From Octopus sinensis (taxonomy: Eukaryota): a stretch of DNA of 64,000 bases. Positions 38,349-62,055 of this stretch are shown piece by piece. Made by a program: the position numbers and the translations under genes. Position 1 is the first letter of the stretch; the number at the start of each line of letters is the position of its first letter. The notes beneath the pieces are model-generated. The model had not been told where the DNA came from. It ran no database searches and saw only the letters and a list, made by a program, of their open reading frames with translations. The DNA is taken from NCBI RefSeq assembly GCF_006345805.1, contig NC_043010.1:3906001-3970000 (forward strand). Direction: 5' to 3'.

Positions 38349-39246
38349 CATGGTCTGATCAATAAGTATCCGAACTGTCACCATCGTAACGAAGCTAAAG
38401 CAGGTAGAGCAAAGCTGCTTGGCATAGATTGACTTTGAACACTGCTATGCTATGCATGTGCACTAAGCTTTAATGTTCTAGCTTACTTCCACTGTTCACA
38501 GCAGTGCTTGGAAGGAAGGTGTGTAGCGTGTGATCATCACATTGACCATGACAGAGAAAGTCAAGCAGAGAATCTGCATCAAATTTTACCAAAAGCTTGG
38601 CAATACCTGCTCAGAGGCCTATGCAAAGTTTTCAAGAAGTTTTCATCATTCTCGGCACATTCAAAGAGATCTTGTGCAATTGAAACCCAAGTGTATTTTT
38701 GGTCAGCTGAAAGCAGTTTGGGCACAAACTTGGCAGATATACATCTCATCCCCAAATCTTCTGTGATAATGGACTGAACTGAATCGTAACTAACCTTCAC
38801 ATCCTCTGATAACTCATGGATGGTGATTTGATGATTTCTCCTCACAGCTGCATGCACATCTGCAATGTTTTTCTCAGTTCTGCTGGTTGCGGGTCACCAA
38901 GAACTTTTGTCAATATTGACATTTTTTTGGCCATCTTGGAAATGTCTGAACCACTTGTAAACTTGTGTGCAGCTCATACACTCCTCTCCATACACTTTCT
39001 GCAATTTTGCATAGGCCCCTGAGCAGGTATTGTCATGACAATTTTCTCTGTCATGGTCAATGTGACGATCACACACTACACACCTTCCTTCCAAGCACTG
39101 CTGTAAACAATTGAAGTAAGCTAGAATCTTAAAACTTAGTCTGCATGCACAATGGAGTTCAAAGTCAGTCTTTGCCAAGCAGCTTTACTCTGTGCTTTAT
39201 TTTCCTTACTATGGCAACAGTCCATATACTTATTGATCAGACCTCG
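38349..39246. mobile_element. Mariner derivative made of two inverted 5' ends
   Basis: TA-flanked TIRs GGTCTGATCAATAAGTAT; transposase start MTEKVKQRICIKF on + (left arm) and N-terminal half (KWFRHFQDG...KFVPKLLSADQK...ENDENFLK) on - (right arm); no catalytic DDD region. Confidence 0.88.
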
Positions 39247-42200
39247 TATATAGTTAAATTTTATTTTGATAAGAAAACATTTTATTTCCATTATCCAGTA
39301 ATTGATTTTCTTAATATTTTCCTGATTGATTCATTTATTTTTGGTTAATTTTCTACATTTTCCTTGCTCTTTGTGGGACAAAACGAATTATACAGGTGTA
39401 GCTATGTGGTAAGAAGTTTGCTTTCCAACCATATTATTTCAGTATTTCAGATTCAGTTCCACTGCAAGGGACCTTGAGCAAATGTCTTTTACTAATACCC
39501 CGGGCTGACCTAACTTTGTAAGTAGATTTGGGAAATGGAAAGTGAATGAAGCCTGCCATACACACACATACATGAGCGTGGGCAGAAAAAAATCATAGGC
39601 TGACTATTAAGGAGTGATGCTAGAAATGTGAAATCGTGCATGCTCATCAACTTCCACTTCTCTTATTAATAACTGCATTTTGTTTTTTTTCCACATAAAC
39701 TAACATCTGACCATTCAAAGAAGACTTCAAAAGTAACTAGTAGCAATTTCTCTTGAGAATTGACAAAATTTGGCTGAAGGGCTGAGCTCTCAAGGAAATT
39801 TATCTTGACATGGTGGCTACATCATGGAATGATACCCCAGTTTATCAACTGTGCAAAAGTGAGCAGCTGAAATTAGGAGGGGAAGGGAGAGTCAGTTCTT
39901 CTCTAGAAATGCATAACTTATTACCTCAATTTTGAATTGGTGATTCTGATGAAGTTATTGTTATGGATCGGGACTGACTTAAATTTTTAAAATATCTACT
40001 TACAGAAACCAATTCTCTAAAGACTTCTATTTAAATTGTTCTGAACTTCAAAACATTTCTAGTTTTCACCTGTCAGTACAAATGCTCAATTGTTTAACAT
40101 CTGAAACTACTTCTAAACTAGTAGTCTTTCATTAATTATATAATGTAATTCTGTATAAAAACTTAATAGAGGGCAGTTATTTACATGTATTTATGTTTAA
40201 AAGGTTGTTCAGAAAATTGCTGTTGTTAAAATTTAAGTTGACTATAATTATGAGACTGAATTCTCTAAAGATATATATTAAGTAACTATCTGAGAGGCAC
40301 AGAGTAAGCAAACCATAACATGAAATATACTATAAATACATGTGTGTATGTGTGGGTATGCATGTGTGGATGCACATATATATATATATGAGTTATATTT
40401 GCTTCAGCTTTAGTTCTGACAAGACATTCACGGGTCTAAACCCTTTGTGACTGTGAAACCATTGGTCACTCTATGACTGAACATAGACTTAACTACTTAT
40501 AAATACACACACACACACATATATATAAAACTATGTTTTGACAAAGCAAAAATTATTGTGTTTATAATTCAAACTACTGTTTTGTATTTGTTTCATTGTC
40601 TTTCATATCTAAAAGCCTGAAAAACTGAAAAGTGAAAAGCAGTAGCTGGATGCCCTTATTAAGATCAAGCACTTCACAGTTTGTAGTGAGTGCTTATATC
40701 ATGCCACCAGCTCTAGTGAGGTCCCCATGTAGCTTGCAAGGCCACAACCATTGAGAGAAGTAACTTTTCTCTACAAGATAAAGAGTTATGAGGGAAAGAG
40801 CCGGAGCAGAACAGGTTTCTTGTTATTAAGGGTCTAGTTGGTTACTCACATTTTTGAAGAGAGGGTGGGGATGATTGGGGTGGAACTGGGAAAAGATAAA
40901 AGAAGTGTAAAATTGAATAACAGGGGAACCAGGAGTGTATATAGGTAGAGTTTTGCAAGAATGTAAGAGGAAGTGAGAGATGGGAATGGTTGAGGGTGTG
41001 TTAATATAATGATTGTAGAACAAGTGTTAAGGGATGGATGTAGTGAATAGTAGTTGAGGTGTGGATTTGTGTGTCAAATGAATGAAGTGCAGAGCAGAAT
41101 TTCAATGCTGATACAGTAGATAGGGTTAAGATGAAAGTGAGAGAGAGATGACATATGGTTGTGTAAGTTGTCAGGGTGTGGTGGTGGTGAGGGGGGGGGT
41201 GTGATGCAAGCATAGCGTGAAGGGAGATTGAGAGGCACATGGGGAAATGGAGAAATAGTTTGGTAGCTCAGGGATGGGAGTGATTGGGGTTAAATGTGGG
41301 TGGAAAGGACAGAATCAGGATGACGGATGGCTTATCAAGTGAAATGTTTACGGGCAATGAGAAAGCTTAGAAGTATCAAGGAAAAGAAGCAGTTAGATGG
41401 GCTGTGGAGGTGTCTTGAGGAGGAGGAGGAGATAGGGTGGAAGCTGTGCATATATTGTGCTTCCAGAACTTAGTTTCACTTGTTAGGGGAGGTCTTCCTA
41501 GGAACTGCATTATTGTATGTTGCCTGGTATCCCAGAAAATATGTATGTATGTGTGTGTGTGTGGAGAGAGAAAGAGATAAATATACATATGTATGTGTAT
41601 GTCTGTACATACATGTATACATAGATTACATACATATACATGTGTGTATATATATGCATGTACTGTATATTATGTACATATAACTTTTGATTTTGTATTT
41701 TTTTTGCATTGATGTTTTCAGTAGAAGAGCATCTGGGGAAAAATGAAGGGTGAAAGAAATGGCAAATAATTAATTGTGCATACAAGGATGGGAATCATTT
41801 AGAAAGGGAAAAGAGGAGAATTTGAGAGAGAGAGAGCAGCTGTAAGTGGAGAGAGATGAGTGTGAAAATGAAGCAGAGATTTAGCATAGAAAGAAAGGAG
41901 ATGTATGTTGGTCAGTTTGAGGCAGGGAGCATTTTTTTCCTTATTGGCCAGATCAGTGACTGTGGTATGCAGCTTGTGAAAACCATTATTCATATTCTTG
42001 TCTTTACATACTTTATATACATATACATGAAAGTAGTGGAAACTGGACTGCTAGTGGAAAAATATTCATGCATAAGTGATATATCTATGAATATGGAGTT
42101 GGATATGAAGAGTCACATAGAAAGAGTGTATGTTGTATTACTAGCATGTATGTTCTAATATATATGCACAACACGCACACACATGCATGCATGCACATAC

Positions 42201-43138
42201 ACACATACACAGAGTGGTACATGCACTTGTAATGAACAATATCATGTGTATATATGACGCCTGAACACTTGCAGAGAGCAGACATCATGGTGGAGTAAGA
42301 ATTGAGGTGATTATGGGGTTGCAAAATACAGGATTGGAAGTTATGTTCTGCATCCTTCCTTCTTATTCCAATTCAATCTGCCTGTTGAAACTATCTTTCT
42401 TGTAGATTCCCTTCCTCTTTCTCTCCTATCAATTTGTTTCCTCCAAACACTTCTCTCCAGTACATATGCGGCATTTTGCAATTTTCTGTATTTCTTCGCA
42501 TATCCCTTATTCTCAGATGCTAAGGATGAAGAACCCCTTTTGCAAGTTTTCCAAAGAAAAAAAGTATTATTTAATAATCGTAAAATTAACAGTTGATTAT
42601 TGTTAAACACCTACAGCATTACCCATATCATATGATATTCCCCTCATCATCATCATCATCATCATCATGGTATATATGTATATATGTCTGTGTGTGTATA
42701 AATATAAATAAACTAACATTTGTTTTTTTATTAGAAGTGTGAAAATGTGTATTGTACAATACAAACAAAAAGAAGGTAATTTTTTTTTTTTAATGTAGAA
42801 TTGATGTCTTTGTGTGTGTTTGTCCCCACTATTACTTGACAACTAATGTTAGTATGTTTATGTACCTGCAACCTAGTGGTTTAGCAAAAGACTAATAGAA
42901 TAAGTGCTAGACTTAAAAAGAAACAAGTCCTGGGGGTCGATTTGTGTGACTAAAGCCCTTCAGAGCAGTGCACCAACATGGCCAATATCAAATAACTGAA
43001 AAAAGTTAAAGGTAAAAGATAAAAGATGATGAACTTTTAAGAAAACATTTTGGCGGAGCAAAAATTATTGTGTTTATAATTCAGGATTTGTTGCATATAT
43101 TTTACAATAACTATATAAAATAATACTGGTTTAAATAT

Positions 43139-43295
43139 ATGTGTGGTAAGTAGCTTGCTTACCAACCACATGGTTCCGGGTTCAGTCCCAGTCCCACTGC
43201 ATGGCATCTTGGGCAAGTGTCTTCTTCTATAGCCTCGGGCTGACCAAAGCCTTGTGAGTGGATTTGGTAGACAGAAACTGAAAGAAGCCCGTTGT

Positions 43296-43364
<69 letters not shown>

Positions 43365-43575
43365 TGTGTGTGTTTGTGTGTCTGTGTTTGTCCCCCTAGC
43401 ATTGCTTGACAACCGATGCTGGTGTGTTTATGTCCCCGTCACTTAGCAGTTCGGCAAAAGAGACTGATAGAATAAGTACTGGGTTTACAAAAGAATAAGT
43501 CCCGGGGTCGAGTTGCTCGACTAAAGGTGGTGCTCCAGCATGGCTGCTGTCAAATGACTGAAACAAGTAAAAGAA
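43139..43575 (+). mobile_element. tRNA-derived SINE family B (internal TA/TG microsatellite), near full length
   Basis: Head GTGTGGTAAG...GGTTCAGTCCC; body and AG-rich tail shared with copies at 23136-23488, 52299-52718, 62653-62990. Confidence 0.88.
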
Positions 43576-44579
43576 AAAGAAAAAAAAAAATTTGAATCCA
43601 GTATTTCATATATTTCAAATTTTGGCACAAGGCCAGCATCTCTGAGGGAGGGGCAAGTCGATTACATCTACCCCAGTGTTCAACTGATACTTATTTTATT
43701 AACCTCAAAAGATGAAATGCAAAGTCAACTCTGGCAGCACTTGAATTTAGAACATAAAGACAGACAAAATGCCACTTAACATTTTGCCCTGTGCAGCAAC
43801 AGTTCTACCAGTTTGCCGCCTTATTTCTCTACTATGATATATTGAAAAAGATATAAGTTATTAGAAAACTAAAACAGCCTCTCATAATAGTAATATGTGT
43901 TCAGCCATTTCTAATTCTGTAAGAAATAACTGTTTAAATCAATAAGTAGGTAAACTAAATAATTATGATCAATAAAAATGTCTTTTTGTGATTGTAGTTT
44001 AAAATTCAATTACTAAAGTCATTATTGTCAAACATTGAGCATCAAAAGAGTATATATGTATAAATATATATATATATGTATGTATGTATGTATGTATAAT
44101 TCTTTTAGCAGCATCCTATTAAATTATTGTTAAATTAATCTTTTCTCCAAACTAATGGTAAGGTGATACTTAAGTATCATTATGGAGAACCTTTCAAATT
44201 AGATGCAAGCAGACAAATTTGCTCTGCTTTATAGTATCTAATGTGGTTAGGTTTTCATTCCTATCAGTCATATATATATATATATATTCTTCCTTAGACA
44301 TCAGAAAGATCAGAAATGCAGCAAAAATTTAAAATATTTTGGTCAAATTAAAGAGGATCATGGGAAAATGGCACATGATATGAGATTAATGAACTCAACT
44401 AAATGCAAAACTTCATCATAAAATACTAACTACAGCTTCTTCACAATCTGCTCGACCAGCTCTCCATCTGATATATTTATGCAGCATGCAGTTAAAGAGC
44501 AGAAATTATTGAAATTAGTCATTACTCATTTTGCCCCACTCTAGACATGCTTATTTATTTATCTATTTATTTTTAAAAG

Positions 44580-44767
44580 TTGAAAATTATCATATTAGAC
44601 ATTTGCATGGAAAAAAAATTTATGTGGGATCTAACAGAGGAAGGAAATTATCCAAATATTTTATTAGCAACCTCAATCATAATCAGATCGAAGTTGAGGA
44701 AAAATTTCTTGAAAAAGAAGTACCTGGCACCTGACTATGTTTCAAGCTTCCACAACTCCAGCTACAG
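44580..44767 (+). CDS. Candidate internal exon C of the plus-strand gene (LKIIILDICMEKKFMWDLTEEGNYPNILLATSIIIRSKLRKNFLKKKYLAPDYVSSFHNSSY)
   Basis: Acceptor ttatttatttatctatttatttttaaaag|, donor CAG|GTATGT, 188 nt open, phase 0 to 2. Confidence 0.5.
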
Positions 44768-47007
44768 GTATGTTGACCAAATTTTACTCCCGTAGATGAT
44801 GCAACAGGGCAGAATAATTGCAATGCAATGGTTTCAAAGAGGTAGGAAGAAAATAGCAAGAAATAAGAAATTACTTAATTCGCCCCACTTTTCTAATCCC
44901 ATCACCATTTTGCTGTTTTCAAATTAAACTATGGATTCACAACTGTCACAGTTGAATTACAAGCAAGCTTACAGTGAAGAAAATCTTCATATGTCACAGA
45001 TACATGAATATTTAGCAGTAAGAGTAGCCATGAAATTTTCACCTGTCTCTTTAGAAATTGCTGATAGCTTCCTTAATAAAAAGAACCTAATAAGCAGTAG
45101 AGGCTGGGATCAGGCTGCATAGAATCTTGAGTAAAACTAGGAGGCAGAATATATTTATATGTGAGTCTGTATGAATATGCTTACATGCAAATACTTGTAC
45201 TAACATGCTATCTTGAAAGTAGTGTTTTGGCTGTGACATGTCCTTTCACATATAATGATTATTCAGTTATGCTTATGTATTTGTTTTGCAAGATTCCTGA
45301 TCTGAAATCATGTGTTGAAACAGATATTGTTATATTTAGGGATGGTTGGGTTTTTTTTTTCCCCAAATAAACACATGCACTATATATATTCATTCTTCAC
45401 TTCAGATTCATTATTGTTTTTATTTTATGTCCGTTGTCTGGAAATCTTTCATCACGCATCCTGTGACCTCTTCAGTGACTCTCCATCCCATGTTTCTCCA
45501 TTTGTTCTGTTTAGTCCATCGTGTCTTTTTATGGACTGTATTCTTGTGTGTGTGCACACATGAGAGTGTATGCTTGTTTAAATGTTTTGTGTGTGTGTGT
45601 GAGTATGGGTTTGCACACTATACTGTTTGTATCCATGCCCTTTATTTAGTTTTGTTTTTTACTTATTTACTTATTCACGTCTCTATTTTTTTCCAGTTTT
45701 GCCTTAGGTATATGCATATGTATCATTTGATTGTTTGTATATGTGTTGCATAGGATTAATGGGGTAAATGATGAAACTCAACATTTGGAGGGGGTAAATC
45801 ACTGGTGTTGAGAATTCATTCACTGAAAACAGTACAGTTGTTAGTGTTTAGGCTTTGCATTAAACCTGATTGCAATGATCCTGATCATCATTAATCCTGA
45901 TTGACCATCGATCTATCGATATATTAAGGACTACTTTCTCTCATCCTATGTTTTATATAGATGCATTTTGCTTTGGGCACTAGCGTGACTGGGTGTGCTA
46001 CCTGGGTGGCCCTTTCGTTTGCTGCCCCTGGACCCCACAAAAAACTCATATTGCCTACAGCAACAGCCTACAACAGGATGAAAAGTGCCAGACCACCACT
46101 ATCCCCACTAGCTATGCTTCTGGCTTTGGGTTATTTGTTACTGGCCAAACTACAAATCAGAAGTTACCCCTGTAGGTAGCATTCACACACACACACACAC
46201 ATATATTTTGTGTGTGTGTGTGTATTACTTTATATATATATCCATCATATTTTTGTAGAGTAACTAGGATGGTTTTCTCATTGGAAAAATGCACTCCTTT
46301 CCAACAACTTGGAAATACATGCATTCATGTTTTATATATTAATATGTATGTGTATGTGTAAGTATGTATGGACAGTATTTCTCTCTCTCTCTCTTCTCCT
46401 TCCTCTCTCCTCTTCGTCTCTCTCTTCCCTTCCCCCTCTCTCCTCTCTCTACACACGCATCATGAGTCGTTATATAATTTGTCAAAATCATATAAATAAT
46501 TATCATTAATACATTGATAAAAATACATGTTCGCAAATGGAAAATTAAAAATTTATGACATGAAAAGGATAGAATGTAAAGTGAATGTGAAAACAAAACA
46601 TTCAAAGCATATTCTTACTGAGAAAGTTGTTTATACCCACCGTTATGATAGGCCACCCTCTATGAATTTGGAAATCTGTTTCTTGCAATTTTTCGTGAAA
46701 GTATTGGTTTATTTATATCTGTGCAATCACCCCAGAGTTTCCATAACAGGAATTTCTATTTTACTATAAATACCATGTGTTTTTTAATCTAAAGGTTACA
46801 CAAATTGGTACTTTCATTATCTATAATTTCCAGCATCGTAACAAAGGAGTTTGAAACTGTAATTTCCCATTTAACAAATCCCCAAAATGCTGAAGATCTA
46901 AAAGTATATACATACTTTTTTTTCACAGTTTAAGTCAGCTTACCTATGACAAGATATAGCTTATAATGATCAACTCTTTAATGACGACAGTCTTACACTA
47001 TAAACAG

Positions 47008-47394
47008 TGGAGGTGCAATGGCCCAGTGGTTAGGGCAGTGGACTCGCGGTCATAGGATCGCGGTTTCGATTCCCAGACCGGGCGTTGTGAGTGTTTATTG
47101 ATCGAAAACACCTAAAAGCTCCACGAGGCTCCGGCAAGAGATGGTGGTGATCCCTGCTGTACTCTTTCACCACAACTTTCTCTCACTCTTACTTCCTGCT
47201 TCTGTTGTACCTGTATTTCAAAGGGCCGGCCTTGTCACTCTCTGTGTCATGCTGAATATCCCTGAGAACTACGTTAAGGGTACACGTGTCTGTGGAGTGC
47301 TCAGCCACTTACACGTTAATTTCATGAGCAGGCTGTTCTGTTGATTCAGATCAACCGGAACCCTCGTCGTCATAACCGATGGAGTGCTTCCACC
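47008..47394 (+). mobile_element. tRNA-derived SINE, intact, with 13-bp target-site duplication
   Basis: Box A (TGGCCCAGTGG) and box B-like (GGTTTCGATTCCC) head; ACACTATAAACAG at 46995-47007 and 47395-47407. Confidence 0.9.
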
Positions 47395-48479
47395 ACACTA
47401 TAAACAGCATAACTAGTGTAGCATTTACTTTTGAAGATATATGTCAGAATTTATTCAAATACACATTTGAATGGAATTTGGAGTGGTTGAATATAGGAGG
47501 TTTTTGTGGCTGAAATTTGACAAATATTTTGTATGTTGTGAAGGCGTGTAGACTGGCTCTTAGAGTGTCGCACTCATGATTGACAGATCATGGGTTTGAT
47601 TTCCAGGCCAGGCAGCATGTTGTGTTCTTAAGCAAAACACTTCATTTCATGTTGCTGTAGTGGGTAGGAGAGTAGCAGAATCATTTGCATGTTGGTAGAA
47701 ATGTTTTACAGTATATCTTCTGGCTCTCTAAATTCTGAGTTCATAATATTAATATGAATGTGTGTGTATGTGAAGCAATGGGAAACCAGTACAGTAATCA
47801 TTTCAAGTTTAGTCATGGATAGCTGTAGTTAATGGTGGTAGAGTAGGATATGGGTCATATAGAGAGTGCTAAAGAGGGTTCACATGCTCTTATATAAAGT
47901 GCTCCTGTAGTGAGGAGAAAATCACCAATTTAATTAATATACCTAGTTGTGAGAAGCTGAAGAAACTACTTCATAATTGAAATTAATTAAAATTATTAAA
48001 GAATTGAATGTTTCTTTAGGCAATGTTTTGATATTATTAAACCTCATCAGCAAAGATAAATTCAGCTCAACTGCTTGATCTTAGATTACTGGTGAGATAT
48101 ATAGGGTTTAAATCAATAAACACTCAGTTGTCTAATAACTTAAAAGAAAAAGTGCAAAAAATATCCAGAATGAAAAACTAGCGGTAAAGTGTGTGCTCGT
48201 AAACTTGATGTGATAGACCAAAAACATTGAAGTAACATTGTACCAATAATGAGGGAAAAATTTATTTAATTGAATATATTTTGGTCAAGCAAAGCAATCA
48301 AAATGATTTTAAAATGTTAATTCATTGTTTTGATACAAAACTTAACAATACTTTTTTTGCCATTGATACTTTTGTACTGAAATACTAGAAACTGTGATGG
48401 AGGTGAAAAGACTCTTCTTAGTCTAAATATATTTGGTATTTAAAAAAATAGAAATTTGGTAATAAATAGGAATTTATAA

Positions 48480-49640
48480 ACGTGGTGGTTAAAATTTCAC
48501 TATTAAATGGTTCATTTGTAGAGTGTTTTGTGCTATGACTGCCAGAAAGTTTACTCCTGGGTCAAAAAGGAAGATGAAGAACTTTTAAACATATTTATGA
48601 GATACTTTGATGCCAACATTACCTGAGAACCTGAGAACCTATACTGTCTTAGATACCATTATAAATGAATAAACTCCTCTAGCATCGGATTACATGGGGA
48701 CAGCGGTCTGTCAGTCTCCCTTAACATAAATAAATGGCCATAGCATGGACTATCAGCACAAACATTAAAATTATCAGTTTTTAGACATTACATTGCTCTT
48801 AATTAGAAACAGGCAATACTCTTATACAAAAGGAAATTGAGTTATACATAAAAATAAATGGCGCCAAATCACTAATTACCTTTCACAGTTACAAAACCCT
48901 TGAGAATATATGAGAACACCCAACATGTTCAGTGAATCCTCAATAAAACCACAGCTTACTACAATGATGCTTTAATAAGTAGTGACTACAAGAATATGTG
49001 GAACATGCCCCACATTACAGGGGAACTAATGTAAGAAACATTTCTAGCACAAGTGTGGCATTCAATATTGCTGTGATTTTCAGTCTTTGATGAGAAAACT
49101 TTTTCCCGTGACACATGAATTTCGTAAGTTCTTCACTAAAAACTATGTTAAGGTTACCTAAAGTTATTTACTAATATTGCACTTCAAATATACAATTGTA
49201 ACTAAAAACTGCATTGATATAGAACTTCATCCATCCCAATTGCAATTGTGGTAACACCACATCTCTCTCCATTTAACAGTGAATGTCTTATAAAGGTTCC
49301 TGTGTAAAATCCAAAGACATCTGATGATGGCAGTAAAAGGAAGTGCACCATATTCATAGAAAATGCAGTCAATTCAGGCATACAGAGCACACATTTTCTT
49401 CATATTTGATCCAGAGTGTAGCAGCTCCAATTTTTCCATTTCAATTTATTGGGAAACTGAAGAATGGTGAAACAAATAACATCCCTGCGAGATGGAGCAG
49501 TGCTAAATCTGAAACATCATATTTCGATGTAAGATGCAATTTATATTTATAACATCTTGATTCAACATTGCAACATGTTAAATAAGAAGAATGAAATTTT
49601 GTCTCTGTGAAGGCATATGAGCGTATTCCATCTGAAAAAC
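48480..49640 (+). mobile_element. Degenerate Penelope-like retroelement (RT plus GIY-YIG endonuclease remnant)
   Basis: Broken frames give PWVKK, SIGLHGDSGL (cf. GLYRDDGL), FLDITL, LFPVTHEFRKFFTKNYVKV, FRHTEHTFSS, RCNLYL, LNKKNEIL, in the order expected for a Penelope ORF. Boundaries approximate. Confidence 0.75.
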
Positions 49641-50053
49641 ATTTCAAGTGAAAACTCAGTAATAACCCGACTTCAATTTGCATAAAGTCGTCATAGGAAA
49701 TATAAGCCCCTGAAATAGTGGCTTGTTTGGGCCAGAAAAGAGCCTGTGCCCAAACCAGCAATCAAGTCAATACAGACTATCAACTTGCTGTGGTTAACAG
49801 CAGAATTTCTGTCAGATGCTTCCCCTGTTAGTTTATAAGTGAAAAACATGTTGGAAAATTCACTTGAAAAATAAAAAAACTAAACTCTGCCAGTTTAAGT
49901 GCAGAACTTATTAACTCATTCTAAGCTTGTTTAAAAAAAGAAAGATTATGACATTGGTTGAAAATTCTATACCATAGACAGCATTTTGGCAATAAAAATG
50001 AAATTAAAAATAGTACAAGATTGCAAACAATATAAAAATTTCAGTGTACTTGC

Positions 50054-50204
50054 CTGGTAATGTTTCATAGAGTACAGTATCTGATTCAATCCAACCATGC
50101 CCATTTTCAACATTGGAAGCTATCGATATTTGTTCACTGAATTGGTCAGGAACCATAAACATATGTTCTTTTTCTTTACCAATACAAGATGTCATCATTG
50201 ACTC
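50054..50204 (-). CDS. PCDH: Cytoplasmic exon of a second protocadherin paralog (ESMMTSCIGKEKEH...WIESDTVLYETLP); ectodomain exon not in window
   Basis: Ungapped 14/38 identity to exon 10179-10335 over the C-terminal part (SNxEN, W, YETLP); same phases (0 to 1); acceptor ttttcttatacatttgagccttcag|; donor CCAG|GCAAGT. Confidence 0.8.
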
Positions 50205-50360
50205 CTGAAGGCTCAAATGTATAAGAAAAAAAAAATTAAAAAATTAAAAGGAAATTATGCATTTTCATGTTATTGGTGTAATGGCACAAAACATCCTAAA
50301 AGAGTATATTTATTATTATCAATATTTGTGATAAATAAACAATTTTGCATGAATTCAATA

Positions 50361-50692
50361 TCATCATCATCATCATCATCGTTTAACGTCCGCTTTCCAT
50401 GGTAGCATGGGTTGGACGTATGACTGAGGGCTGATGTACCAGATGGCTGCACCAGGCTTCAATCTTGATCTGGCAGAGTTTCTATAGCTGGATGCCCTTC
50501 CTAACGCCAACCACTCCGAGAGTGTAGTGGGTGCTTTTATGTGCCACTGGCACACAGCCAGTCAGGCGGCACTAGCAACGACCTCGCTTGAATCTTTTAC
50601 ACATGCCACTGGCGCGGGTGCCAGTAAGGCGATGCTGGTAACAATCCCACTCAAATGGTGTTTTTTACGTGCCACCAGCACGGAGGCCAGAT
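50361..50692 (-). mobile_element. Repeat family A copy
   Basis: Reverse complement of 41-259 including the (CAT)n tail; lies about 160 bp upstream of the second protocadherin exon. Confidence 0.8.
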
Positions 50693-52298
50693 ATATCAAA
50701 TACAATTTTGATAGTAATTATTTTGGTTATTTTTCTAGTTATAAGTTCAGGAAAAACAAGACTGCACGAAAGTAAGAAGCACAAAGTTCAAAACACATAA
50801 AATAGTGTGTAAATGTTGGTAATTTATCTCAATACAGCATTAGTGCTTAATTCATTTAACTTAGAAGGGCAGAAGATCATGTCGATCAAAGTAGGATTTC
50901 AACTCAGAGTTGTAATATACCAAACATTTAATCTATTATTCAGTCCATTCTCAAAATTTACAACTATACCTTCTAACTTCATTGTTATTGTCATATTCTT
51001 CTCCATGTCGCTAGTTTGAATATAAAATAACCATCATCCAGATGTTGCTCATCATTCTCACATATTTGCTAGAATGGATTAGATGCATTATCCCACTTGG
51101 CCAGTTCATCATTTCTTCCATATTCTAGCTGAACTTTTCTCAGTATCACTTCATCAACTCCTAATTACTATTATTTATTCCTTATTGCTATGTTTTAGTT
51201 TTTTTTTTTTTTCCATTCTGTTCTCATAAATAAGCATGCACGAGCTTATTATCTTTAAATCCAAGTTGACTTCATATTCATAGCTCCTTTCTCTGATTCA
51301 TATATCACATTTATCACACAATCAATTCTTTCAAGCAGGGAGATCATTTTTGGATGACAGAGAAGATGTATTTGAGTGAAATTATGCTGTATATTAGTGA
51401 TACCTATTTTATCATAATCCTGTTGACGAAAAGGCAGATTTGATACTATTAAGATTGAAATTGAGAAGCATGAGTCACCATAAAACGCATGCATTCTGCA
51501 TTCATAACCAACTACACCAGCCTATATTTGACAAAAGATAAATGTCAAGTTCCTTTGTTATTTCTATTAGTATTTTACTTGTATTGATTTTAAAGAATAT
51601 TTTACTTCTAAAAATGAATTAGTCACTTTGGAAAGCAATTTTTAAAACCACGTAGAATCAATTCATAAAGTTTTATCAAAAGACTTTGAATCATTATTAA
51701 CACAGCATTGCTTACAAAACCTTGCATTCTCTTTATAATATATCTCACACAGTTTCATTTCTCTTATTTTATCTTTTACTTTGTTCCAGTCATTAGACTG
51801 TGGTCATGCTGGGGCACCATCTTCAAGCATTTAGTCAAATAAATAAACCTCAGTGCATTTTTTTAAAGTGTAGTATTTATGCTGTTGATCTCTTTTAACA
51901 AACTGTTAAGTTATGGGGCTGTAAACAAACCAACTCTGGTTGTAAAGCAGTGGTTGGAACAAACACACACACACACACACACATACACACACACACACAC
52001 GCATGCACACACACACACACACACACAGATATATATATACATATGGGTGCCCATTCAGTTTCCGTCTACCAAATTCACTCACAATGCACTGATCAGCCTG
52101 GGGTTATAGAAGACACTTGAAAAGGTGCCAAGGAATGAGACTGGACTTAAAACAATACAGCCGCAAAGCAAGCTTCTTGGCCACAAAACCATGACGGGAT
52201 TTATAAATAACTTTTGCATGTTTATTGAAGTTGCTGTAAATATTGAGTAATTTTTTTTATTAAACCTGTAATATTCAAACAAGTGGTAATTTTTCATA

Positions 52299-52718
52299 TA
52301 CTCTTTTACTTGTTTCAGTCATTTGACTGCTGCCATGCTGGAGCACCGCCTTTAGTCGGGCAAATCGACCCCGGAACTTATTCTTTGTAAGCCCAGTACT
52401 TATTCTTTGTAAGCCCAGTACTTATTCTATCGGTCCCTTTTGCCGAACCGCTAAGTGACGGGAACGTAAACACACCAGGATCGGTTGTCAAGCAATACTA
52501 GAGGGACAAACACAGACACACAAACACATACATACACATACATATATATATACATATATACGACAGGCTTCTTTCAGTTTCCGTCTACCAAATCCACTCA
52601 CAAGGCATTGGTCGGCCCGGGGCTATAGCAGAAGACACTTGCCCAAGATGCCACGCAGTGGGACTGAACCCAGAACCATGTGGCTGGTTAGCAAGCTACT
52701 TACCACACAGCCACTCCT
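52299..52718 (-). mobile_element. tRNA-derived SINE family B, full length
   Basis: Reverse complement of the 43139-43575 family; contains a 22-bp tandem duplication at 52376-52419. Confidence 0.9.
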
Positions 52719-53159
52719 ATTCATTAAGACTATACTTGTAAAATATCTTCTCTTTGAAATTTGCTGTATCTTAAGTTTTCATATTTCCTTTATAAATCTA
52801 TTCCCATTAATTAGTATTCTTCTTATTTTTTTGTTTTTGTTGCTCTTTGTTCTTCATAGACAGCTTTTTGATAATTGAAATATTTCAAAATAGCAAGTTC
52901 CTTTTATGTATGTATCCCAGGTAGTAATGCAAAGTGCATTACTTCAAACCTTCTCATGGCTCTACCAACATTTCTACGTCCCATGGTTTTGCTCAGAATA
53001 TTTTGTTTGCAAATGCTTTCTCAATGAAGAACATGATGTTTGCTTATGCTTTCTGGAATTTATATTTGACGTAGTTTACAATACTTGTAATATAGTGCCT
53101 GTGTCAAACTTTACCTACTGAGCTAAATATTTAAAGTGTGTAAATACAAACATATTACA

Positions 53160-53205
<46 letters not shown>

Positions 53206-53208
53206 ATA

Positions 53209-53430
53209 TTTCTTTACTACCCACAAGAGGCTAAACACAGAGGGGACAAACAAGGACAGACAAACGGATTACATCGATCCCAGTGCGTAACTGGTACTTA
53301 ATTTATCGACCCCGAAAGGATGAAAGGCAAAGTCGACCTCGGCGGAATTTGAACTCAGAACGTAATGGCAGACGAAATACGGCTATGCATTTCGCCCAGC
53401 CTGCTAACGTTTCTGCCAGCTCACCGCCTT
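53209..53430 (-). mobile_element. tRNA-derived SINE family C
   Basis: Reverse complement of the 28559-28795 family; degenerate copies near 22900-23040, 43610-43815, 50810-50920, 60380-60490. Confidence 0.85.
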
Positions 53431-53448
53431 ATATATATATGTGTGTGT

Positions 53449-53483
<35 letters not shown>

Positions 53484-54319
53484 CACATACACATATACTC
53501 ACATATGGGCACATGCATGTGCACACACTGGCACAAATTCACCCATATACCTTTAAAGGTATTCTCTTCTATACAAACTAAATATATTTTTGCAATGTGC
53601 ATAATGTATCAGGTATAAAAATACAAAATCTTAAAAAAAAAAATTGACTAATAAGTTGCACATAAATAATAAGGTTTTGAATTAGATACACAATAAAAAT
53701 AATTACATTCTTAGCCTCGGTTATCTCGCGCAGCATTCTTAATATGAAGGAAATAGGAGATAATAGAAAATAATGAATTTGGATATTGATCTTGCAAAGA
53801 AAGGTTAGTTTAATAAGAGAGAATAAATAAATAGAATGTAGAAAATGTAGAGATATATCCATTAATCCTCTTGCATCACCTATGATTAGATTTCTTTTAC
53901 TTATTTTTGATTAGCTACCGAGTTTGGGGGAAGGAAACCCATCACAGATTCCTAAGAATGTTGCACCAGTCCTTACATCTTTAATTATAGTATTTAATGC
54001 ACCTAGCATAATTTATTCTTAAATTATAATTTATACAATTATGGTAATACATGTGTGTAGATGTTATCAGTATTGGCTTCTCCTAAGAATTGACTCATCC
54101 GCTTTCAAGTTGTTGTTGTTGTTGCTATACTCTTGCATTGCTGATTTGGATTAGAGAAAATGTAATCAAATTTTCAGTCTATTCTAGTATTTAAAAGATT
54201 AAATTTAGTTCTGTATTTCTTGGGAATTTCATTCTATGTTTCTTCTTCAATTTTAAATATATCATGACTTGTTAATATGCACTTTAATGAATATATTAGT
54301 TGACCTGATGTGTATATGT

Positions 54320-54351
<32 letters not shown>

Positions 54352-55310
54352 AAGGGGAGAGAGAAAGAGAGAAGAGGTGGGGTCTGTAATCTTTCTGTTT
54401 TTAAAACTTTTCTCACCATAACCTCAGGCATCTGACAACTTCAGGGTGAGAAACTTAAAATTACTATTGAATGGAATTTTTTTTCCATAATGAAGTGTTT
54501 TCCCAACAGTTTTCAGATGACTAATGGTCTGCAGGGTACGTTTCCAAATGAGAAAGCACCTTCATAAGCCAATATACAATCTTTAATAAATTTTTGAATT
54601 GTGAAACTGAATAGGGCTCAATACCTTTACACCAGCTTTAATAATGAATATGGTCCTTTAGGTTATTGACAATGATATTGTCATCATAGTTGTTGATTGC
54701 AATAACAAGCTGAGAAACATCAGAACCGATACACTGGCAAGCACGATGATTGTAATCTAAAGCACAAAGTAATCCAAAGACGGCCCAGGGAGCCTTCTTC
54801 TGTGGAGTAAGGGATCTTAATAATTCTAGCATAATCTGCAGAAAAGTAGCTGTCCATCGTTTAGTATCTTCTATCCAATCAGCTTTGATGGTCAAATTGG
54901 TTTTATAAAGAGAAAACAAAACAGGAAAATGGTGTTACATATTATGTCTCTTCTCGATGAGGAGTGTGCTTCTCAAGAAGATTTTATTATTTTTGTGCTT
55001 TATACTATAAATTTTGTAAACAGTAGCTTCATTGGTTAAAGGTTCCCAAAAGCCAATCACTAGTTCACTGCATTTCTGAGGCAAGAGTGACAAGGGACTC
55101 TCTGTATCTCAGGTAAAATAAATACTATGATGCTTCTGTTTAGATGCATCAATTTATTAATTTTTTTCGCTGATGTGTACATTGACAAAAGGTATATACT
55201 TTATCTATATATATATATATATGCTCTCTATCTTTTATGTTAAAAGTCTCTTGACTGTCATTCCTTTTTATATATGCATCAATTGAGATTGTGTGAAACT
55301 TTCACTAAAC

Positions 55311-55604
55311 CAGGGATCAGCAACTTATTTTTGTAGTGACCCACTTTTGATGTTTTTACATTTTCCCTTGACCCATTTGTATACTATATCACATCACACA
55401 TTTAAAAATATCCAAACATATCACTTCGTGTCCATCACTGGCAAGATTATGTAAGCAAAAAAGAAATTTAAAAGTCTGTGGCACTAGACTTTAAAAGCCA
55501 TCATCTACTCAATGACCTACAAACACATTAAATATGAACACTTTTTGGAAAAGGTTTGAAGCCCACAGTAAACACCACAGTGGTTCAGTTGTTGCTGATC
55601 CCTA
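55311..55604. mobile_element. hAT-like MITE
   Basis: TIR CAGGGATCAGCAAC / GTTGCTGATCCCTA; 8-bp TSD not evident. Confidence 0.55.
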
Positions 55605-56500
55605 AACAAACCAGCAAGATTTCAAAACTTCCATACCTTCCTTCTCCTACATAACATTTGTTCCATAACCTTTCCCTTTTCAAGCTGAAATTGCTTACAG
55701 TAATCTGTAGGTGCAATAATGACTGTGTGTTAAGAAATTTGCTTTCCAGCCACATGGATCTTGGTTCGATCCCACTGTGTTCCACCTTGAGCAAATAACT
55801 TCTGTCATAGTCATGTCAGTGTAATTTAGTGGGTAGAAACTGTGGCAAAAGGCATTTGCTTCAGGTGCAGCAGAGTGTAATCAAATCAGAAACTGTACTG
55901 TTGTGAAATGAACTTCGTAACCACACAGCCATACCTTCACCTTAACTATATACCATACCTCTATCTATAGATTAGTGCTTACATCAGAACATACATGTTA
56001 TGCATTAGAAGGAAAGGATGCAAATTATGAGATCCCAGTGTTTAGTTGAACCTTAAAAAAACACTAAAATATGCATATTTAAACAAGAATGAAGATATAG
56101 AAACCTTTAACATAAAAGATAGCTGGACATTTTTAGGATGCAACTTACTGAAAAACATTCATTAGTCCTGTGCTTGGAGAAAGAAGCAAATTGTTGCTTA
56201 GTAGCTCCCTGATTACGGCTCGAAATGCCATACAACAGTTCTTAAAAGCGAGAAAGAAAATTAGTAGTAAAGACTGATATCAGAATGCTGACTATCAGCT
56301 CCATTTGGGAAAAAGTGGTATGTGAATGTTCTAGCTATGATAGTGTAAGCGATAAAGTTTTACTAGTTTGCCAGATAGTGTGTTTGACTGATACAGGATT
56401 CTTTGAAAACAAGTGCATCCGAAATAACAATGACATTTTTAGGGACATTGAAATGAAATGGATGGGAGTATGATTTTAGGATAATGAAAAGGTACCTTAA

Positions 56501-56721
56501 CCCTTTCATTGCCAACCTGGCTGAAACCGGCTCTGGCTCTGTAATACAAATGTCTTGTTTTCGTAAGTTTTGAATTAAAATCTTCTACCAAACTTTAGTC
56601 ACACTTTATGTTCCTAACAGTAGCTTAATGATAACTAAGTTATCTTAATAAATTCTTTGTTACATTTAAAGTAACTGAAAGAAACACAGAGCATCTAAAA
56701 ATAAATACAGTAACAAAAGGG
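56501..56721. mobile_element. piggyBac-type MITE
   Basis: TTAA target duplication on both sides with CCCTTT...AAAGGG termini. Confidence 0.75.
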
Positions 56722-57161
56722 TTAAATGGGAGATGAAGAATGGCCAGTTACTTTTTTAGGTTAATTTTAACTTGATTACTCAGTTAACCAAAATGATGTT
56801 CCCCTAATAGGTTCCCCTTGATTACTTGAGACCGGGAATGTTGAAGGTATGTCAGGAATAGTTGCTGAGATGTTTGAAAGCATCAAACTACATAAATAGT
56901 TAAATGACTAATAATAATAATAATAATGTTAAAATCATGAGATAATGAGCTTAATGCATACAGATCTCAGGTGCACTTCATCGCATCAGAAAAAATAACC
57001 AAATCTGCCTGAACAGATCATTGAACATTGAAGTCATGGGAGAATACACATCACATTATGGGATTCCTCATTATGGGGTAACTTTTGGGAACACAACTTT
57101 TGTGTAATATGGGAAAGTTTGGGTGGAATTATGAAATAATTATTTTGCAATACACTTGTAA

Positions 57162-57553
57162 TCTCTCTCTATATAAAGCTGAAGTTGTCTGTGTATGGCA
57201 GGTTTGGTAGCCTTCAACTAACACTATCTCCTCCGAGACCCTGAGGTGCAAAATGACCAAAATTGAGAGTATGATAGAAGAAGGCTTGCTCTTCCTTCCA
57301 TAGAAGAAAAAATTCAAATCAGACCATGTTAACACAAGAAATTATTTACATCAAAAAGGTGCTTTTTTCTATGAAAATCCCAATTTTTTTACAATTTTTT
57401 GACTGCTCTGTCGTCATTTTTTGGTGTATTTCAACCAGAAAAATGTTCACCTAAAGAGAATAACAAGCTACATAATGCAAAATTTTTACTTTTCAAAAAT
57501 TCCAATTCTAAAGGGTCGAAACAAATCCGAGCAATGCCGGGTGATACTGCTAG
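57162..57553 (+). mobile_element. Non-autonomous Helitron-like element
   Basis: Inserted between A and T; 5' TCTCTCTCTATATAAAGCTGAAG; subterminal GC-rich hairpin-like CCGAGCAATGCCGG; 3' CTAG terminus. Confidence 0.75.
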
Positions 57554-58312
57554 TATGAAATAAAAGTAAAATATTGAGATATGTTTACAAACACTGTTTG
57601 GATTGATGTTTAACTCTTTGAAAGGTAAATTTGTTCAATGAGTGCTCCTTATCCAACTTACAATATCATTTTCACCTGTCTTTTTTTTTTGTTTCATTGT
57701 CGCTAAGAACTAATATAGTTGTGCCATCAGATTTTTCAATAATATCTGTTATAGTTCTCAAAATGCTTTCAATTTTCTGTTTACAATATTTATCCCATTT
57801 GGTAATCCCTTATTTGTTATATTCTTGGTAATTATTTCTATATTTTGATTTATGGCCAGTATCACTCTCTCTCTCTCACACACACACACACACATGCACA
57901 CTTGCACGCACACACACACACATTCCTCTTTTTTTTTTCTTTTCTCACCTAATGATTGATTTAATGCAGTCTCCTATCAGGCTATTCATTTTTTTTTTTC
58001 ACGTGAGCTCCTGGATCTTTAAAATTTTAATGGAGTTTCTCAAAAAGACTGAGCCATTCATTATGGCTAATAAAGCAAAACTTCAGAAGAGAGAATTTTC
58101 AGAAATTAGATCACATGCTACTTAATAAATTCTTCTTTGTGTTTATTGACTCAGAATGAAAGGGTGAGTGAGGTTAGTGTTGTTAATATTTCATATGAAA
58201 TATTCATAATTAGTTTTGGAAAGTAATACATATGCAAATATGGAATTCCACAGCACTTCAGTGTATGTTAGTTATATGGTCACATTGTTACTGCCATCAT
58301 CATCAAAGTTGA

Positions 58313-58343
<31 letters not shown>

Positions 58344-61229: not shown

Positions 61230-61560
61230 TGAGCTAACTTATAGAATTTTAAGATGAAAATAGCAACCAACATAGTATCTGTCAATTTACTGGGTATTGG
61301 ACTTAACCCTAGTTTGCTGTGAACTCCGTATACACCAAACGGCCACCCTCTGTAAGTAGATTCATGTTCTAACCATCCACTAAATATTATTAAGCAAATA
61401 CCTATAACGACAAATGATGAAGCAACCTTCCATGGATTTGAGAAGAAGGTCAGCCAAATACTCATCCATAGCTTCTTTGAAAACACAACAGCAGAGGACT
61501 CACCCATGACAGAAATACAAATTAAGAAAAGCAATATGACCTGGTTCAAATGACCATACA
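61230..61560 (+). mobile_element. Penelope-like RT remnant
   Basis: IATNIVSVNLLGIGLN (cf. VNFLDVTxNL) and SCSNHPLNIIKQIPI (cf. SNHPPxIIKQIP). Confidence 0.6.
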
Positions 61561-62009
61561 AGGAAAACTTAACTCACATGACAAATGATAATTCTCCTTA
61601 ATCAACAAGCACTTCCACACTCATCTTTATTCTACAAGAACAGCATCATCATCACCACCACCACCACCACCACCATCAGCATTTAATGACTACTTTTTTC
61701 TGCTTGCCTGGGTCAGAATGGAGTACATTGGAGTAGTTTCCTTCAGCTGGACTCCCTTCCTGTTACCAAAACCCACTTGTTTCCAAGCAAGGTTCACCAC
61801 TAATCTCCCACTCTAATGAATAAAAAGCAGCTCAGATGTTTCTGTGAACAACTGGAAACAAAGGACACCAAATAAATTGGGCAGCATTTTGAGACATGGC
61901 CAGAAGCTCAGATGGTGGACTACAGGCAAATAACACCTTTAGTGAAGTTTCTGTTTACAATCAGTAAAAGAACCATGTAGTCAAGAGAAATACAATTTCA
62001 AACACACAT

Positions 62010-62055
<46 letters not shown>

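What the first reader, a model, noticed from the sequence alone, without database searches (positions are those of the whole stretch)
50054..50204. Orphan protocadherin cytoplasmic exon with no ectodomain exon within 13.8 kb
Seen: an intact, stop-free paralog of the 10179-10335 exon with intact splice sites, but no cadherin ORF or recognisable remnant between 50205 and 64000, whereas the equivalent intron of the complete gene is only 1.25 kb. Established: vertebrate clustered protocadherins splice many large variable exons to shared constant cytoplasmic exons, while cephalopod protocadherins are generally described as tandem full-length genes. Inference, three options: a long intron to one exon outside the window; a shared constant-type exon serving several upstream ectodomain exons (the exciting case); or a relic of a deleted gene.
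Basis: partly seen in the sequence, partly recalled or inferred. Interest (0 to 1): 0.75.

Follow-up and report, generated by a model that had tools for sequence, protein, structure and literature searches.

The report
Second exon of an ordinary protocadherin gene
The "orphan" exon is the normal second exon of an octopus protocadherin gene; it looks orphaned only because its first intron is about 43-45 kb long, so the large first exon lies beyond the end of the window.

Summary
The window is Octopus sinensis CM016872.1:3,906,001-3,970,000. The exon at 50054-50204 (minus strand) is real. It has 50 open codons, starts in phase 0 and ends in phase 1, and has an AG acceptor behind a long pyrimidine tract. 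Its donor is GC (AG|GCAAGT), not GT. No cadherin sequence lies between 50205 and 64000.

The exon is not an orphan. In O. vulgaris the nucleotide-identical exon is annotated (CAI9732405.1) as spliced to one ectodomain exon 43.0 kb upstream. In O. bimaculoides the same pair is 42.4 kb apart. In Argonauta hians (GAB1604332.1) the pair is 17.2 kb apart. The next gene downstream sits at a conserved distance: 36.1 kb in the window and 35.2 kb in Argonauta.

Across the O. vulgaris locus there are three ectodomain exons and three tail exons, strictly alternating. Each upstream neighbour has its own tail exon and its own third exon.

The exon is much better conserved than its introns (150/151 against 90%; 149/151 against 80%), so it is not a relic.

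The shared-constant-exon and relic options are not.

Caveat: the O. sinensis first exon, predicted about 32-34 kb beyond the window end, could not be fetched.

The parts
50054..50204 (-). Exon A: second coding exon (50 codons + 1 nt, phase 0 to phase 1) of a protocadherin gene. It encodes a cytoplasmic segment ending in the family motif GHGW.E....YETLP.
   Evidence: sequence and frame. O. vulgaris CAI9732405.1 reads ...MAQRSHQ|ESMMTS...YETLP|AGI, with this exon 100% identical. Argonauta ortholog; conservation 150/151 and 149/151 against 90% and 80% in introns.
50205..50264 (-). Acceptor AG (50206-50205) with its pyrimidine tract and branch region. It is conserved like the exon.
   Evidence: 57/58 identical to the Logan contig L001, against 86% in the downstream intron; 97/98 identical to O. 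bimaculoides over the upstream 100 nt.
50048..50053 (-). GC-type splice donor GCAAGT (AG|GCAAGT). It is GT in Argonauta hians.
   Evidence: The O. vulgaris model uses it.
50205..64000 (-). The 3' 13.8 kb of intron 1, which is 43.0 kb in O. vulgaris and about 45 kb predicted here. It holds repeats and microsatellites and no coding remnant.
   Evidence: window 47975-62074 is collinear with O. vulgaris L007 56332-41985; nothing cadherin-like there.
50360..50691 (.). Insertion of about 330 nt, starting about 155 nt upstream of the acceptor. It includes a SINE-like repeat (50360-50554). It is present in O. sinensis and O. vulgaris and absent in O. bimaculoides and in L001.
   Evidence: repeat copies at 49-259, 9342-9532 and 30062-30329; the alignment breaks at this point.
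18955..50053 (-). Intron 2 as annotated in O. vulgaris (GC-AG, about 31 kb here). No family-type third exon lies in it.
   Evidence: junction; no exon-3-like hit between 14000 and 50053, nor in the orthologous regions.
18944..18954 (-). Last coding piece of the O. vulgaris model (ttacag|CTGGAATCTGA, which gives ...P|AGI*). The surrounding 300 nt are 100% identical in the window.
   Evidence: Whether this junction is biologically meaningful or a read-through towards the next gene was not tested.
11582..13969 (-). For comparison: exon 1 (ectodomain, transmembrane segment and proximal tail) of the neighbouring complete gene, XP_036365145.1 'protocadherin gamma-B6'.
   Evidence: 100% identity.
10179..10335 (-). 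For comparison: the private tail exon (exon B) of that neighbour, paralogous to exon A.
7781..7818 (-). For comparison: exon 3 of the neighbour as used in the RefSeq model (G|LKYFPQEQTPSS). Its fourth coding exon lies about 19.3 kb beyond window position 1.

Best explanation
Exon A (50054-50204, minus strand) is the private second coding exon of a conventional, tandemly duplicated octopod protocadherin gene.

The gene's first exon is about 2.4 kb and encodes the signal peptide, cadherin repeats, transmembrane segment and membrane-proximal tail, ending ...MAQRSHQ. It lies upstream on the same strand, beyond position 64000. By collinearity with O. vulgaris it should sit at about 95.6-98 kb in window numbering, roughly CM016872.1:4.0016-4.0040 Mb.

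Transcription starts upstream of that exon. An intron 1 of about 43-45 kb is removed, joining the phase-0 donor after ...CAT CAG to the acceptor at 50205/50204. Exon A adds 50 cytoplasmic residues that end in the family-wide motif GHGW.E....YETLP. A GC-AG intron then follows.

Shown here: the exon, its frame and its splice signals; the orthologous exon pairs and their distances in three other species; annotated exon1-exonA junctions in two species; synteny; the 1:1 alternation of ectodomain and tail exons; and selective constraint on the exon.

Inferred: that O. sinensis itself still has the intact first exon; that the O. vulgaris junctions rest on transcript data; and that the YETL / YEEI tyrosine motif is a sorting or SH2-docking signal (from general knowledge of YxxPhi and pYEEI motifs, untested).
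For: Identity of the window. XP_036365145.1 matches 100% and the locus maps to CM016872.1, so the window is bases 3,906,001-3,970,000.

O. vulgaris. CAI9732405.1 (P0144) reads ...MAQRSHQ|ESMMTSCIGKEKEH...YETLP|AGI. In L007 exon 1 is at 8715-11107 and exon A at 54108-54258, nucleotide-identical to the window, so intron 1 is 43.0 kb. The window is collinear with L007 at 96-98% identity. That annotation was built with Iso-Seq, RNA-seq, PASA and EVM (PMC10700109).

Argonauta hians. GAB1604332.1 (P0041) reads ...MAQRSHQ|ESMMTSYIGKDKEH...YETLP. Exon 1 is at L004 10001-12340 and exon 2 at 29515-29701, so the intron is 17.2 kb.

Synteny. From exon A to the ATG of the next gene is 36.1 kb in the window and 35.2 kb in Argonauta.

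O. bimaculoides. Exon 1 ends at L009 10363 and exon A is at 52777-52927, so the intron is 42.4 kb.

One-to-one pairing. The contiguous O. vulgaris loci L006 and L007 hold 3 ectodomain exons and 3 tail exons, alternating. No ectodomain hit lies inside any of the long introns.

Constraint. Exon against intron identity is 150/151 against 90.3% for O. bimaculoides (Fisher p = 1.4e-5) and 149/151 against 80% for L001 (p = 2.8e-11). Against Argonauta the only length difference is an in-frame 12-codon insertion, and dN/dS is about 0.40.

Literature. Cephalopods are reported not to splice multiple first exons to shared final exons (PMC9068888).
Against: The O. sinensis first exon was not seen. About 41.6 kb between the window end and locus L008 (record 3,970,001-4,011,611) could not be fetched.

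No O. sinensis protein model containing exon A or this ectodomain turned up among representatives or in the three relevant clusters.

The O. vulgaris first exon carries a 1-nt deletion in an A6 run that splits it into 418-aa and 417-aa models. This is either a residual error of the Nanopore-based assembly or a real, very recent frameshift.

The O. bimaculoides RefSeq products of this gene (125-150 aa) do not read exon A in frame. The gene's coding range ends at the first out-of-frame TAA inside exon A. However, that assembly has a 1,420-N gap inside exon 1.

The gene lacks the family's usual long third exon.
Confidence: 0.87

Rival explanations
1. Shared constant-type exon. Several upstream ectodomain exons (this gene's own, plus those of XP_029644834.1 and XP_029645598.1 further upstream) are alternatively spliced to exon A, as in vertebrate clustered protocadherins.
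For: Only permissive evidence. All genes in the cluster have the same orientation. All first exons end in phase 0 and all tail exons start in phase 0, so such splicing would stay in frame. Intron 1 is very long.
Against: Each upstream ectodomain exon is followed by its own tail exon about 1 kb away and its own third exon (P0145 at L008 10001-12379, 13436-13588 and 24010-24279). The count is 3:3 and alternating. None of the retrieved isoforms of the neighbours contains exon A. The ESMMTS-type tail occurs only with the syntenic ectodomain exon in O. vulgaris and Argonauta. Identical C-termini seen on two Argonauta proteins come from separate physical exons, not a shared one. There is no Pfam match to any known cadherin tail family. 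Published analysis denies this mode in cephalopods (PMC9068888).
Confidence: 0.03
2. Relic or dying gene. In Octopus the ectodomain exon is broken or, in O. sinensis, deleted. Exon A would then be a leftover, no longer part of a productive protocadherin mRNA.
For: There is a 1-nt frameshift in the O. vulgaris first exon. No O. sinensis protein model was found. The O. bimaculoides RefSeq products skip exon A or read it out of frame. The donor has changed from GT to GC in Octopus. The usual third exon is absent.
Against: Exon A and its acceptor region are significantly better conserved than the flanking intron in two independent comparisons. The reading frame is open in five sequences. Apart from the single homopolymer indel, the 2.39 kb O. 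vulgaris first exon is open in both halves. That assembly is Nanopore R9.4.1-based. The truncated O. bimaculoides models are explained by a 1,420-N assembly gap inside exon 1. AG|GCAAGT is the normal context of functional GC donors (my own knowledge).
Confidence: 0.08
3. Chance open frame. The exon is not real; the similarity to 10179-10335 is coincidental.
For: The within-window similarity is weak: 35% over 40 aa, E = 3.6e-4. A 50-codon open frame has roughly a 2% chance per position in this base composition (my estimate).
Against: The exon matches the tail exons of dozens of octopod protocadherins, down to E = 6e-20. It is annotated as coding in two species. It is conserved at 99% where the introns are 80-90%.
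Confidence: 0.01

Closest known systems
O. vulgaris gene models CAI9732406.1 + CAI9732405.1 ('putative protocadherin beta-18', OX597827.1), the ortholog in the sister species
   Same: Exon A is identical at every nucleotide. The flanks are 98.4% identical and the neighbours and order are the same. The annotated junction is ...MAQRSHQ|ESMMTS....
   Different: There the first exon is split into two models by a 1-nt deletion in an A run. In O. sinensis the first exon was not seen and no protein model was found.
Argonauta hians GAB1604332.1 ('putative protocadherin beta-18, partial'), the syntenic ortholog
   Same: It has the same two-exon core. The tail exon begins ESMMTS and ends VLYETLP. It occupies the same position, 35 kb upstream of the gamma-B6-like gene.
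   Different: Its intron 1 is 17.2 kb rather than about 43 kb. Its donor is GT rather than GC. It has a 12-codon glycine-rich insertion and is 56-58% identical in amino acids.
Cephalopod tandem protocadherin arrays (Albertin et al. 2015 as cited in PMC6339937; Albertin et al. 2022, PMC9068888)
   Same: These are head-to-tail, multi-exonic, full-length gene duplicates with signs of gene conversion. This gene fits that pattern.
   Different: Nothing of substance differs, except an unusually long first intron (17-45 kb against 1-3 kb in its nearest paralogs).
Vertebrate clustered protocadherins (alpha and gamma clusters: variable first exons spliced to shared constant exons)
   Same: Both have a large first exon encoding the ectodomain, transmembrane segment and proximal tail, followed by small cytoplasmic exons. 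In both, the genes lie in tandem in one orientation.
   Different: Here every ectodomain exon has its own tail exon. No shared exon was found. The tail has no detectable similarity to any Pfam family.

Membership tests
Conventional (one gene, one tail) cephalopod protocadherin gene | A single large ectodomain/transmembrane exon lies upstream on the same strand and is joined to this exon. | tested here: met
   Met in the orthologs. O. vulgaris: 43.0 kb upstream, with an annotated junction. A. hians: 17.2 kb upstream, with an annotated junction. O. bimaculoides: 42.4 kb upstream. In O. sinensis itself the exon lies outside the window, in sequence that could not be fetched.
Conventional (one gene, one tail) cephalopod protocadherin gene | Ectodomain exons and tail exons correspond one to one across the locus. 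| tested here: met
   There are 3 ectodomain exons and 3 tail exons, alternating, over about 134 kb of O. vulgaris (L006 + L007). The loci from the other species each showed one ectodomain exon and one tail exon.
Conventional (one gene, one tail) cephalopod protocadherin gene | Conserved synteny with the flanking protocadherin genes. | tested here: met
   The order P0027-type, P0031-type, this gene, gamma-B6-type holds in O. vulgaris (accessions ...408 to ...404). It is consistent with the positions found for three of the four genes in A. hians. Spacing to the next gene is 36.1 kb against 35.2 kb.
Conventional (one gene, one tail) cephalopod protocadherin gene | The exon is under coding constraint. 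| tested here: met
   Exon 99% against intron 80-90% (p = 1.4e-5 and 2.8e-11). The only indel is in frame, and dN/dS is about 0.4 against Argonauta.
Conventional (one gene, one tail) cephalopod protocadherin gene | The exon1-exonA junction is present in transcripts of O. sinensis. | not testable with these tools
   No read-level RNA data are available here. There is indirect support only: the O. vulgaris annotation was built with Iso-Seq and RNA-seq.
Vertebrate-type variable/constant protocadherin cluster | Several variable first exons lie upstream of the shared exon, with no private downstream exons of their own. | tested here: not met
   The upstream genes have their own tail exon and third exon.
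Vertebrate-type variable/constant protocadherin cluster | Two or more distinct ectodomain exons are joined to the same downstream exon in transcripts or models. | tested here: not met
   Only the syntenic ectodomain exon carries the ESMMTS tail in any retrieved model. A suspected shared C-terminus in A. hians comes from two separate exons. Read-level data were not testable.
Vertebrate-type variable/constant protocadherin cluster | Sequence relationship to the vertebrate constant region or known cadherin tail families. | tested here: not met
   No Pfam match for exon A or for a full paralogous tail at E <= 1.
Decayed pseudo-exon / relic | The exon diverges at the same rate as the surrounding intron, with frame or splice sites lost in some lineages. 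| tested here: not met
   The frame is open and the acceptor intact in five sequences. Conservation is far above that of the intron. The donor changed from GT to GC but kept the AG|GCAAGT consensus.

The most novel reading that the evidence does not exclude
The most novel reading not excluded is that exon A, besides serving its own ectodomain exon 43-45 kb upstream, is occasionally reached by read-through transcripts from the two genes further upstream, which would skip their private tail exons. That would be a rudimentary variable/constant arrangement in a cephalopod. A milder variant: the annotated O. vulgaris junction from exon A into an exon 5 kb upstream of the next gene's ATG reflects real transcriptional coupling of neighbouring protocadherin genes.
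Probability: 0.03. Interest if true: 0.8.

Novelty: already known. Interest (0 to 1): 0.1.

Why it matters
It matters little beyond annotation. The result removes an apparent exception to the published rule that cephalopods diversify protocadherins by duplicating whole genes rather than by splicing variable exons to shared constant exons.

Three practical points follow. First, the O. sinensis protein set seems to lack a model for this gene, which could be added. Second, first introns in this cluster can reach 17-45 kb, so a 64 kb window can easily separate an exon from its partner. Third, a tail exon without a nearby ectodomain exon should not be read as evidence of a constant exon.

There is also a small evolutionary point. 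The ectodomain exons of neighbouring genes are homogenised within each lineage, while their tail exons stay distinct and orthologous between species.

Tried and rejected
1. Searching the 50-aa exon peptide in the 5.8-billion-protein set returned only an unspliced Logan genomic ORF. This looked like 'no model contains the exon'. It was misleading, because the O. vulgaris model is a non-representative member of another cluster and was found only through the listing of cluster members.

2. tblastx and blastn of the two gene regions against each other gave only repeats.

3. I tried to reach the O. sinensis first exon through the upstream neighbour XP_029644834.1. The 10 kb flank stops about 7.6 kb short.

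4. Two Argonauta proteins (P0153, P0030) have identical 87-aa C-termini, which suggested a shared final exon. I rejected this. P0030's last exon lies upstream of where P0153's gene must be, and no P0153 call appears inside P0030's locus. They are therefore separate, homogenised exons.

5. There is a weak tail-like hit inside intron 1 of O. bimaculoides (L009 37549-37680). It matches repeat-derived sequence that an old gene model had read into, and is not a tail-exon remnant.

6. The truncated O. bimaculoides products looked like evidence of pseudogenisation. They are explained by a 1,420-N assembly gap in exon 1.

7. The Logan runs SRR11869394 and SRR11869384 could not be assigned to a species. 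The contig is only 88% identical to O. bimaculoides. Against the window its introns are 80-86% identical. It therefore comes from a more distant octopod.

8. Pfam found no family for the tail exon.

Full report
**What the window is.** The long minus-strand ORF at 11501-13969, joined to the exon at 10179-10335, matches XP_036365145.1 'protocadherin gamma-B6 [Octopus sinensis]' at 100%. That gene was located on CM016872.1. Aligning the fetched locus to the window shows that the window is bases 3,906,001-3,970,000 of that record, on the plus strand.

**Checking the observation.**
- On the minus strand, 50054-50204 reads ESMMTSCIGKEKEHMFMVPDQFSEQISIASNVENGHGWIESDTVLYETLP with no stop.
- It is preceded by ...ttttttttttcttatacatttgagccttcag| and starts in phase 0.
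- It ends after one extra base (phase 1), exactly like the 10179-10335 exon of the complete gene. That gene's first exon ends in phase 0 at 11582, so its intron 1 is 1,246 nt.
- The donor is GC, not GT: CCAG|GCAAGT.
- tblastn of one tail exon against the window finds the other at 35% identity over 40 aa, E = 3.6e-4.
- The exon matches tail exons of many other octopod protocadherins much better, up to E = 6e-20.
- Five ectodomain queries and 60 tail-exon queries find nothing else in the window. Between 50205 and 64000 there is no cadherin remnant. The ORFs there are repeat or microsatellite junk.

The observation therefore stands, with the correction about the donor.

**Finding the partner exon.**

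A direct search with the 50-aa peptide returned only an unspliced genomic ORF from two Logan assemblies.

Searching with the complete neighbouring protein listed the family. Inspecting the C-termini showed one protein with an obviously orthologous tail. This is Argonauta hians GAB1604332.1 (P0041)...MAQRSHQ|ESMMTSYIGKDKEHVFMIPEQLNERLSISSNTDNN(G-rich)GHTWIESDNVLYETLP. In its locus the ectodomain exon is at L004 10001-12340 and the tail exon at 29515-29701, an intron of 17.2 kb.

The Argonauta ortholog of the window's complete gene (P0003) starts 35.2 kb downstream of that tail exon. In the window the corresponding distance, 50054 to 13969, is 36.1 kb.

Listing cluster members then uncovered O. 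vulgaris CAI9732405.1 (P0144, 417 aa). It had been hidden as a non-representative member. It reads ...MAQRSHQ|ESMMTSCIGKEKEHMFMVPDQFSEQISIASNVENGHGWIESDTVLYETLP|AGI, with the exon 100% identical to the window's.

In the 97 kb O. vulgaris locus L007:
- the ectodomain exon is at 8715-11107;
- exon A is at 54108-54258, nucleotide-identical to the window;
- the next gene's ATG is at 92659;
- intron 1 is therefore 43.0 kb.

The window is collinear with L007 at 96-98% identity; window 62074 corresponds to L007 41985.

In O. bimaculoides the same first exon ends at L009 10363 and exon A is at 52777-52927, an intron of 42.4 kb.

**Where the O. sinensis first exon should be.** The O. sinensis locus of the next gene upstream (XP_029644834.1, L008) ends at record position 4,011,612. 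That point aligns to about L007 1125. The first exon should therefore lie some 7.6-10 kb further on, at roughly 4.0016-4.0040 Mb. In window numbering this is 95.6-98 kb, about 32-34 kb past the window end. I could not fetch that stretch. This is the one link not seen directly in O. sinensis.

**Testing the shared-exon idea.**
- Over the contiguous O. vulgaris loci L006 + L007 (about 134 kb) there are three of each, strictly alternating. No ectodomain hit falls inside any long intron.
- The upstream O. sinensis gene XP_029644834.1 has its own tail exon 1 kb after its first exon and its own 270-nt third exon 10 kb further on.
- The gene above it (XP_029645598.1 / XP_029645599.1) likewise has its own tail and alternative 3' ends.
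- None of these isoforms contains exon A.
- Two Argonauta proteins with identical 87-aa C-termini looked like a shared final exon. The gene ranges show two separate physical exons, so this is homogenisation, not sharing.
- Published work states that cephalopods do not splice multiple first exons to shared final exons, and it notes gene conversion in these arrays (PMC9068888).

**Testing the relic idea.**
- Against O. bimaculoides the exon is 150/151 identical and the 100 nt upstream 97/98, while the rest of the flanking 2 kb is 90.3% (Fisher p = 1.4e-5).
- Against the more distant Logan octopod the exon is 149/151 and the introns are 80% (p = 2.8e-11).
- Against Argonauta the only length change is an in-frame 12-codon glycine-rich insertion, and dN/dS is about 0.40.

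This is the signature of a working coding exon.

Points that pull the other way:
- The O. vulgaris first exon has a single-base deletion in an A6 run, TTTTAAAAAACCC to TTTT-AAAAACCC. The annotators therefore produced 418-aa and 417-aa halves. The rest of the 2.39 kb is open, and the assembly is Nanopore R9.4.1-based with polishing. An assembly error is plausible but unproven.
- The O. bimaculoides RefSeq products of this gene are only 125-150 aa and use other downstream exons. The gene's coding range ends exactly at the first out-of-frame TAA inside exon A (L009 52805). This suggests that an isoform enters exon A after a frame-shifting intermediate exon. However, that assembly has a 1,420-N gap inside the first exon, which by itself explains the truncated models.
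- No O. sinensis protein model for this gene was found.
- The family's usual long third exon (...NDVIDLKS...WNLP...KPLP...) is absent downstream of exon A in Octopus and in Argonauta.

**Gene structure after exon A.** The O. vulgaris model uses the GC donor and a GC-AG intron to reach ttacag|CTGGAATCTGA. The 300 nt around this site are 100% identical in the window, where the coding piece is 18954-18944, about 5 kb upstream of the next gene's ATG. This adds only Ala-Gly-Ile and a stop. I did not test whether this is the biological 3' end or a read-through towards the neighbour. The Argonauta donor is a canonical GT (AG|GTAAGT). All four Octopus-type sequences have AG|GCAAGT.

**Likely role of the exon.** By my pattern search, sixty of the 158 family proteins collected carry a tail ending in Y[ED][TSNE][LIV]P, usually preceded by ..SGHGW.E... 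YETL fits the YxxPhi endocytic sorting pattern. The YEEI of many paralogs is the classic Src-family SH2 ligand. This comes from general knowledge and was not tested. Pfam has no family for this segment.

**Verdict.** The exon is real, functional-looking and already annotated in two related species as exon 2 of a standard protocadherin gene. Its apparent isolation comes from a 43-45 kb first intron and the window boundary. The shared-exon and relic options are not supported. Interest is low.

Noticed in passing
L007 8715-11107 (O. vulgaris), L008 10001-12379 (O. sinensis paralog) and L004 10001-12340 (A. hians ortholog): The ectodomain exon of this gene is 94.7% identical in nucleotides to the first exon of the neighbouring paralog, even across species. 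It is only 83.9% identical to its syntenic Argonauta ortholog. In Argonauta the two paralogs fall in one 90% cluster. The tail exons, in contrast, are clearly orthologous between species and only about 44% identical between paralogs. So the ectodomain exons evolve in concert (gene conversion) while the tail exons stay distinct.
   Followed up: partly
window 50048-50053 (-); L004 29702-29707: The donor after exon A is GT in Argonauta hians (AG|GTAAGT). It is GC in O. sinensis, O. vulgaris, O. bimaculoides and the Logan octopod (AG|GCAAGT). This is a lineage-specific switch to a GC-AG intron.
   Followed up: partly
window 50360-50691: An insertion of about 330 nt, including a SINE-like repeat (50360-50554), begins about 155 nt upstream of the exon A acceptor. 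It is present in O. sinensis and O. vulgaris and absent in O. bimaculoides and L001. Other copies of the repeat lie at 49-259, 9342-9532, 30062-30329, 35935-35989 and 40644-40708.
   Followed up: partly
window 7640-7818 (-): Exon 3 of the complete gene begins G|LKYFPQEQTPSS. The open frame continues past the RefSeq donor (GKKPLLQPLSKPKDFGTSS...NIINLKSTQVD...) and then stops. It looks like a decayed copy of the family's long third exon, without the WNLP...KPLP end. The RefSeq model instead splices from 7781 to an exon about 27 kb away, 19.3 kb beyond window position 1.
   Followed up: partly
window 26702-27172 (+): A truncated Tc1/mariner-type transposase ORF: 156 aa with Pfam HTH_Tnp_Tc3_2 (E = 3.6e-9) plus HTH_23. 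It lies in the 36 kb between exon A and the next gene.
   Followed up: partly
window 23134-23488, 43140-43580, 52299-52718 and 62653-63013: A dispersed repeat family of about 350-420 bp, 79-93% identical between copies. Two copies lie inside the long intron 1. The same element was translated into the C-terminus of an O. bimaculoides protein model (P0130).
   Followed up: no
L007 about 9958 (O. vulgaris OX597827.1): A single-base deletion in an A6 homopolymer splits an otherwise open 2.39 kb ectodomain exon into two annotated 'genes', CAI9732406.1 (418 aa) and CAI9732405.1 (417 aa). It is probably an assembly or annotation artefact worth correcting.
   Followed up: partly
L009 8481-9900 (O. bimaculoides CM046614.1): A 1,420-N gap inside the ectodomain exon makes RefSeq call LOC106871765 an 'uncharacterized protein' of 125-150 aa that starts at an internal Met. 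One isoform's coding range ends at the first out-of-frame TAA inside exon A (L009 52805).
   Followed up: partly
L010 (A. hians BAAFZT010000037.1:21823414-21895921) and L003: Long introns are common in this cluster. The Argonauta P0030 gene spans 52.5 kb and the window's own complete gene spans 33.3 kb of coding range.
   Followed up: no
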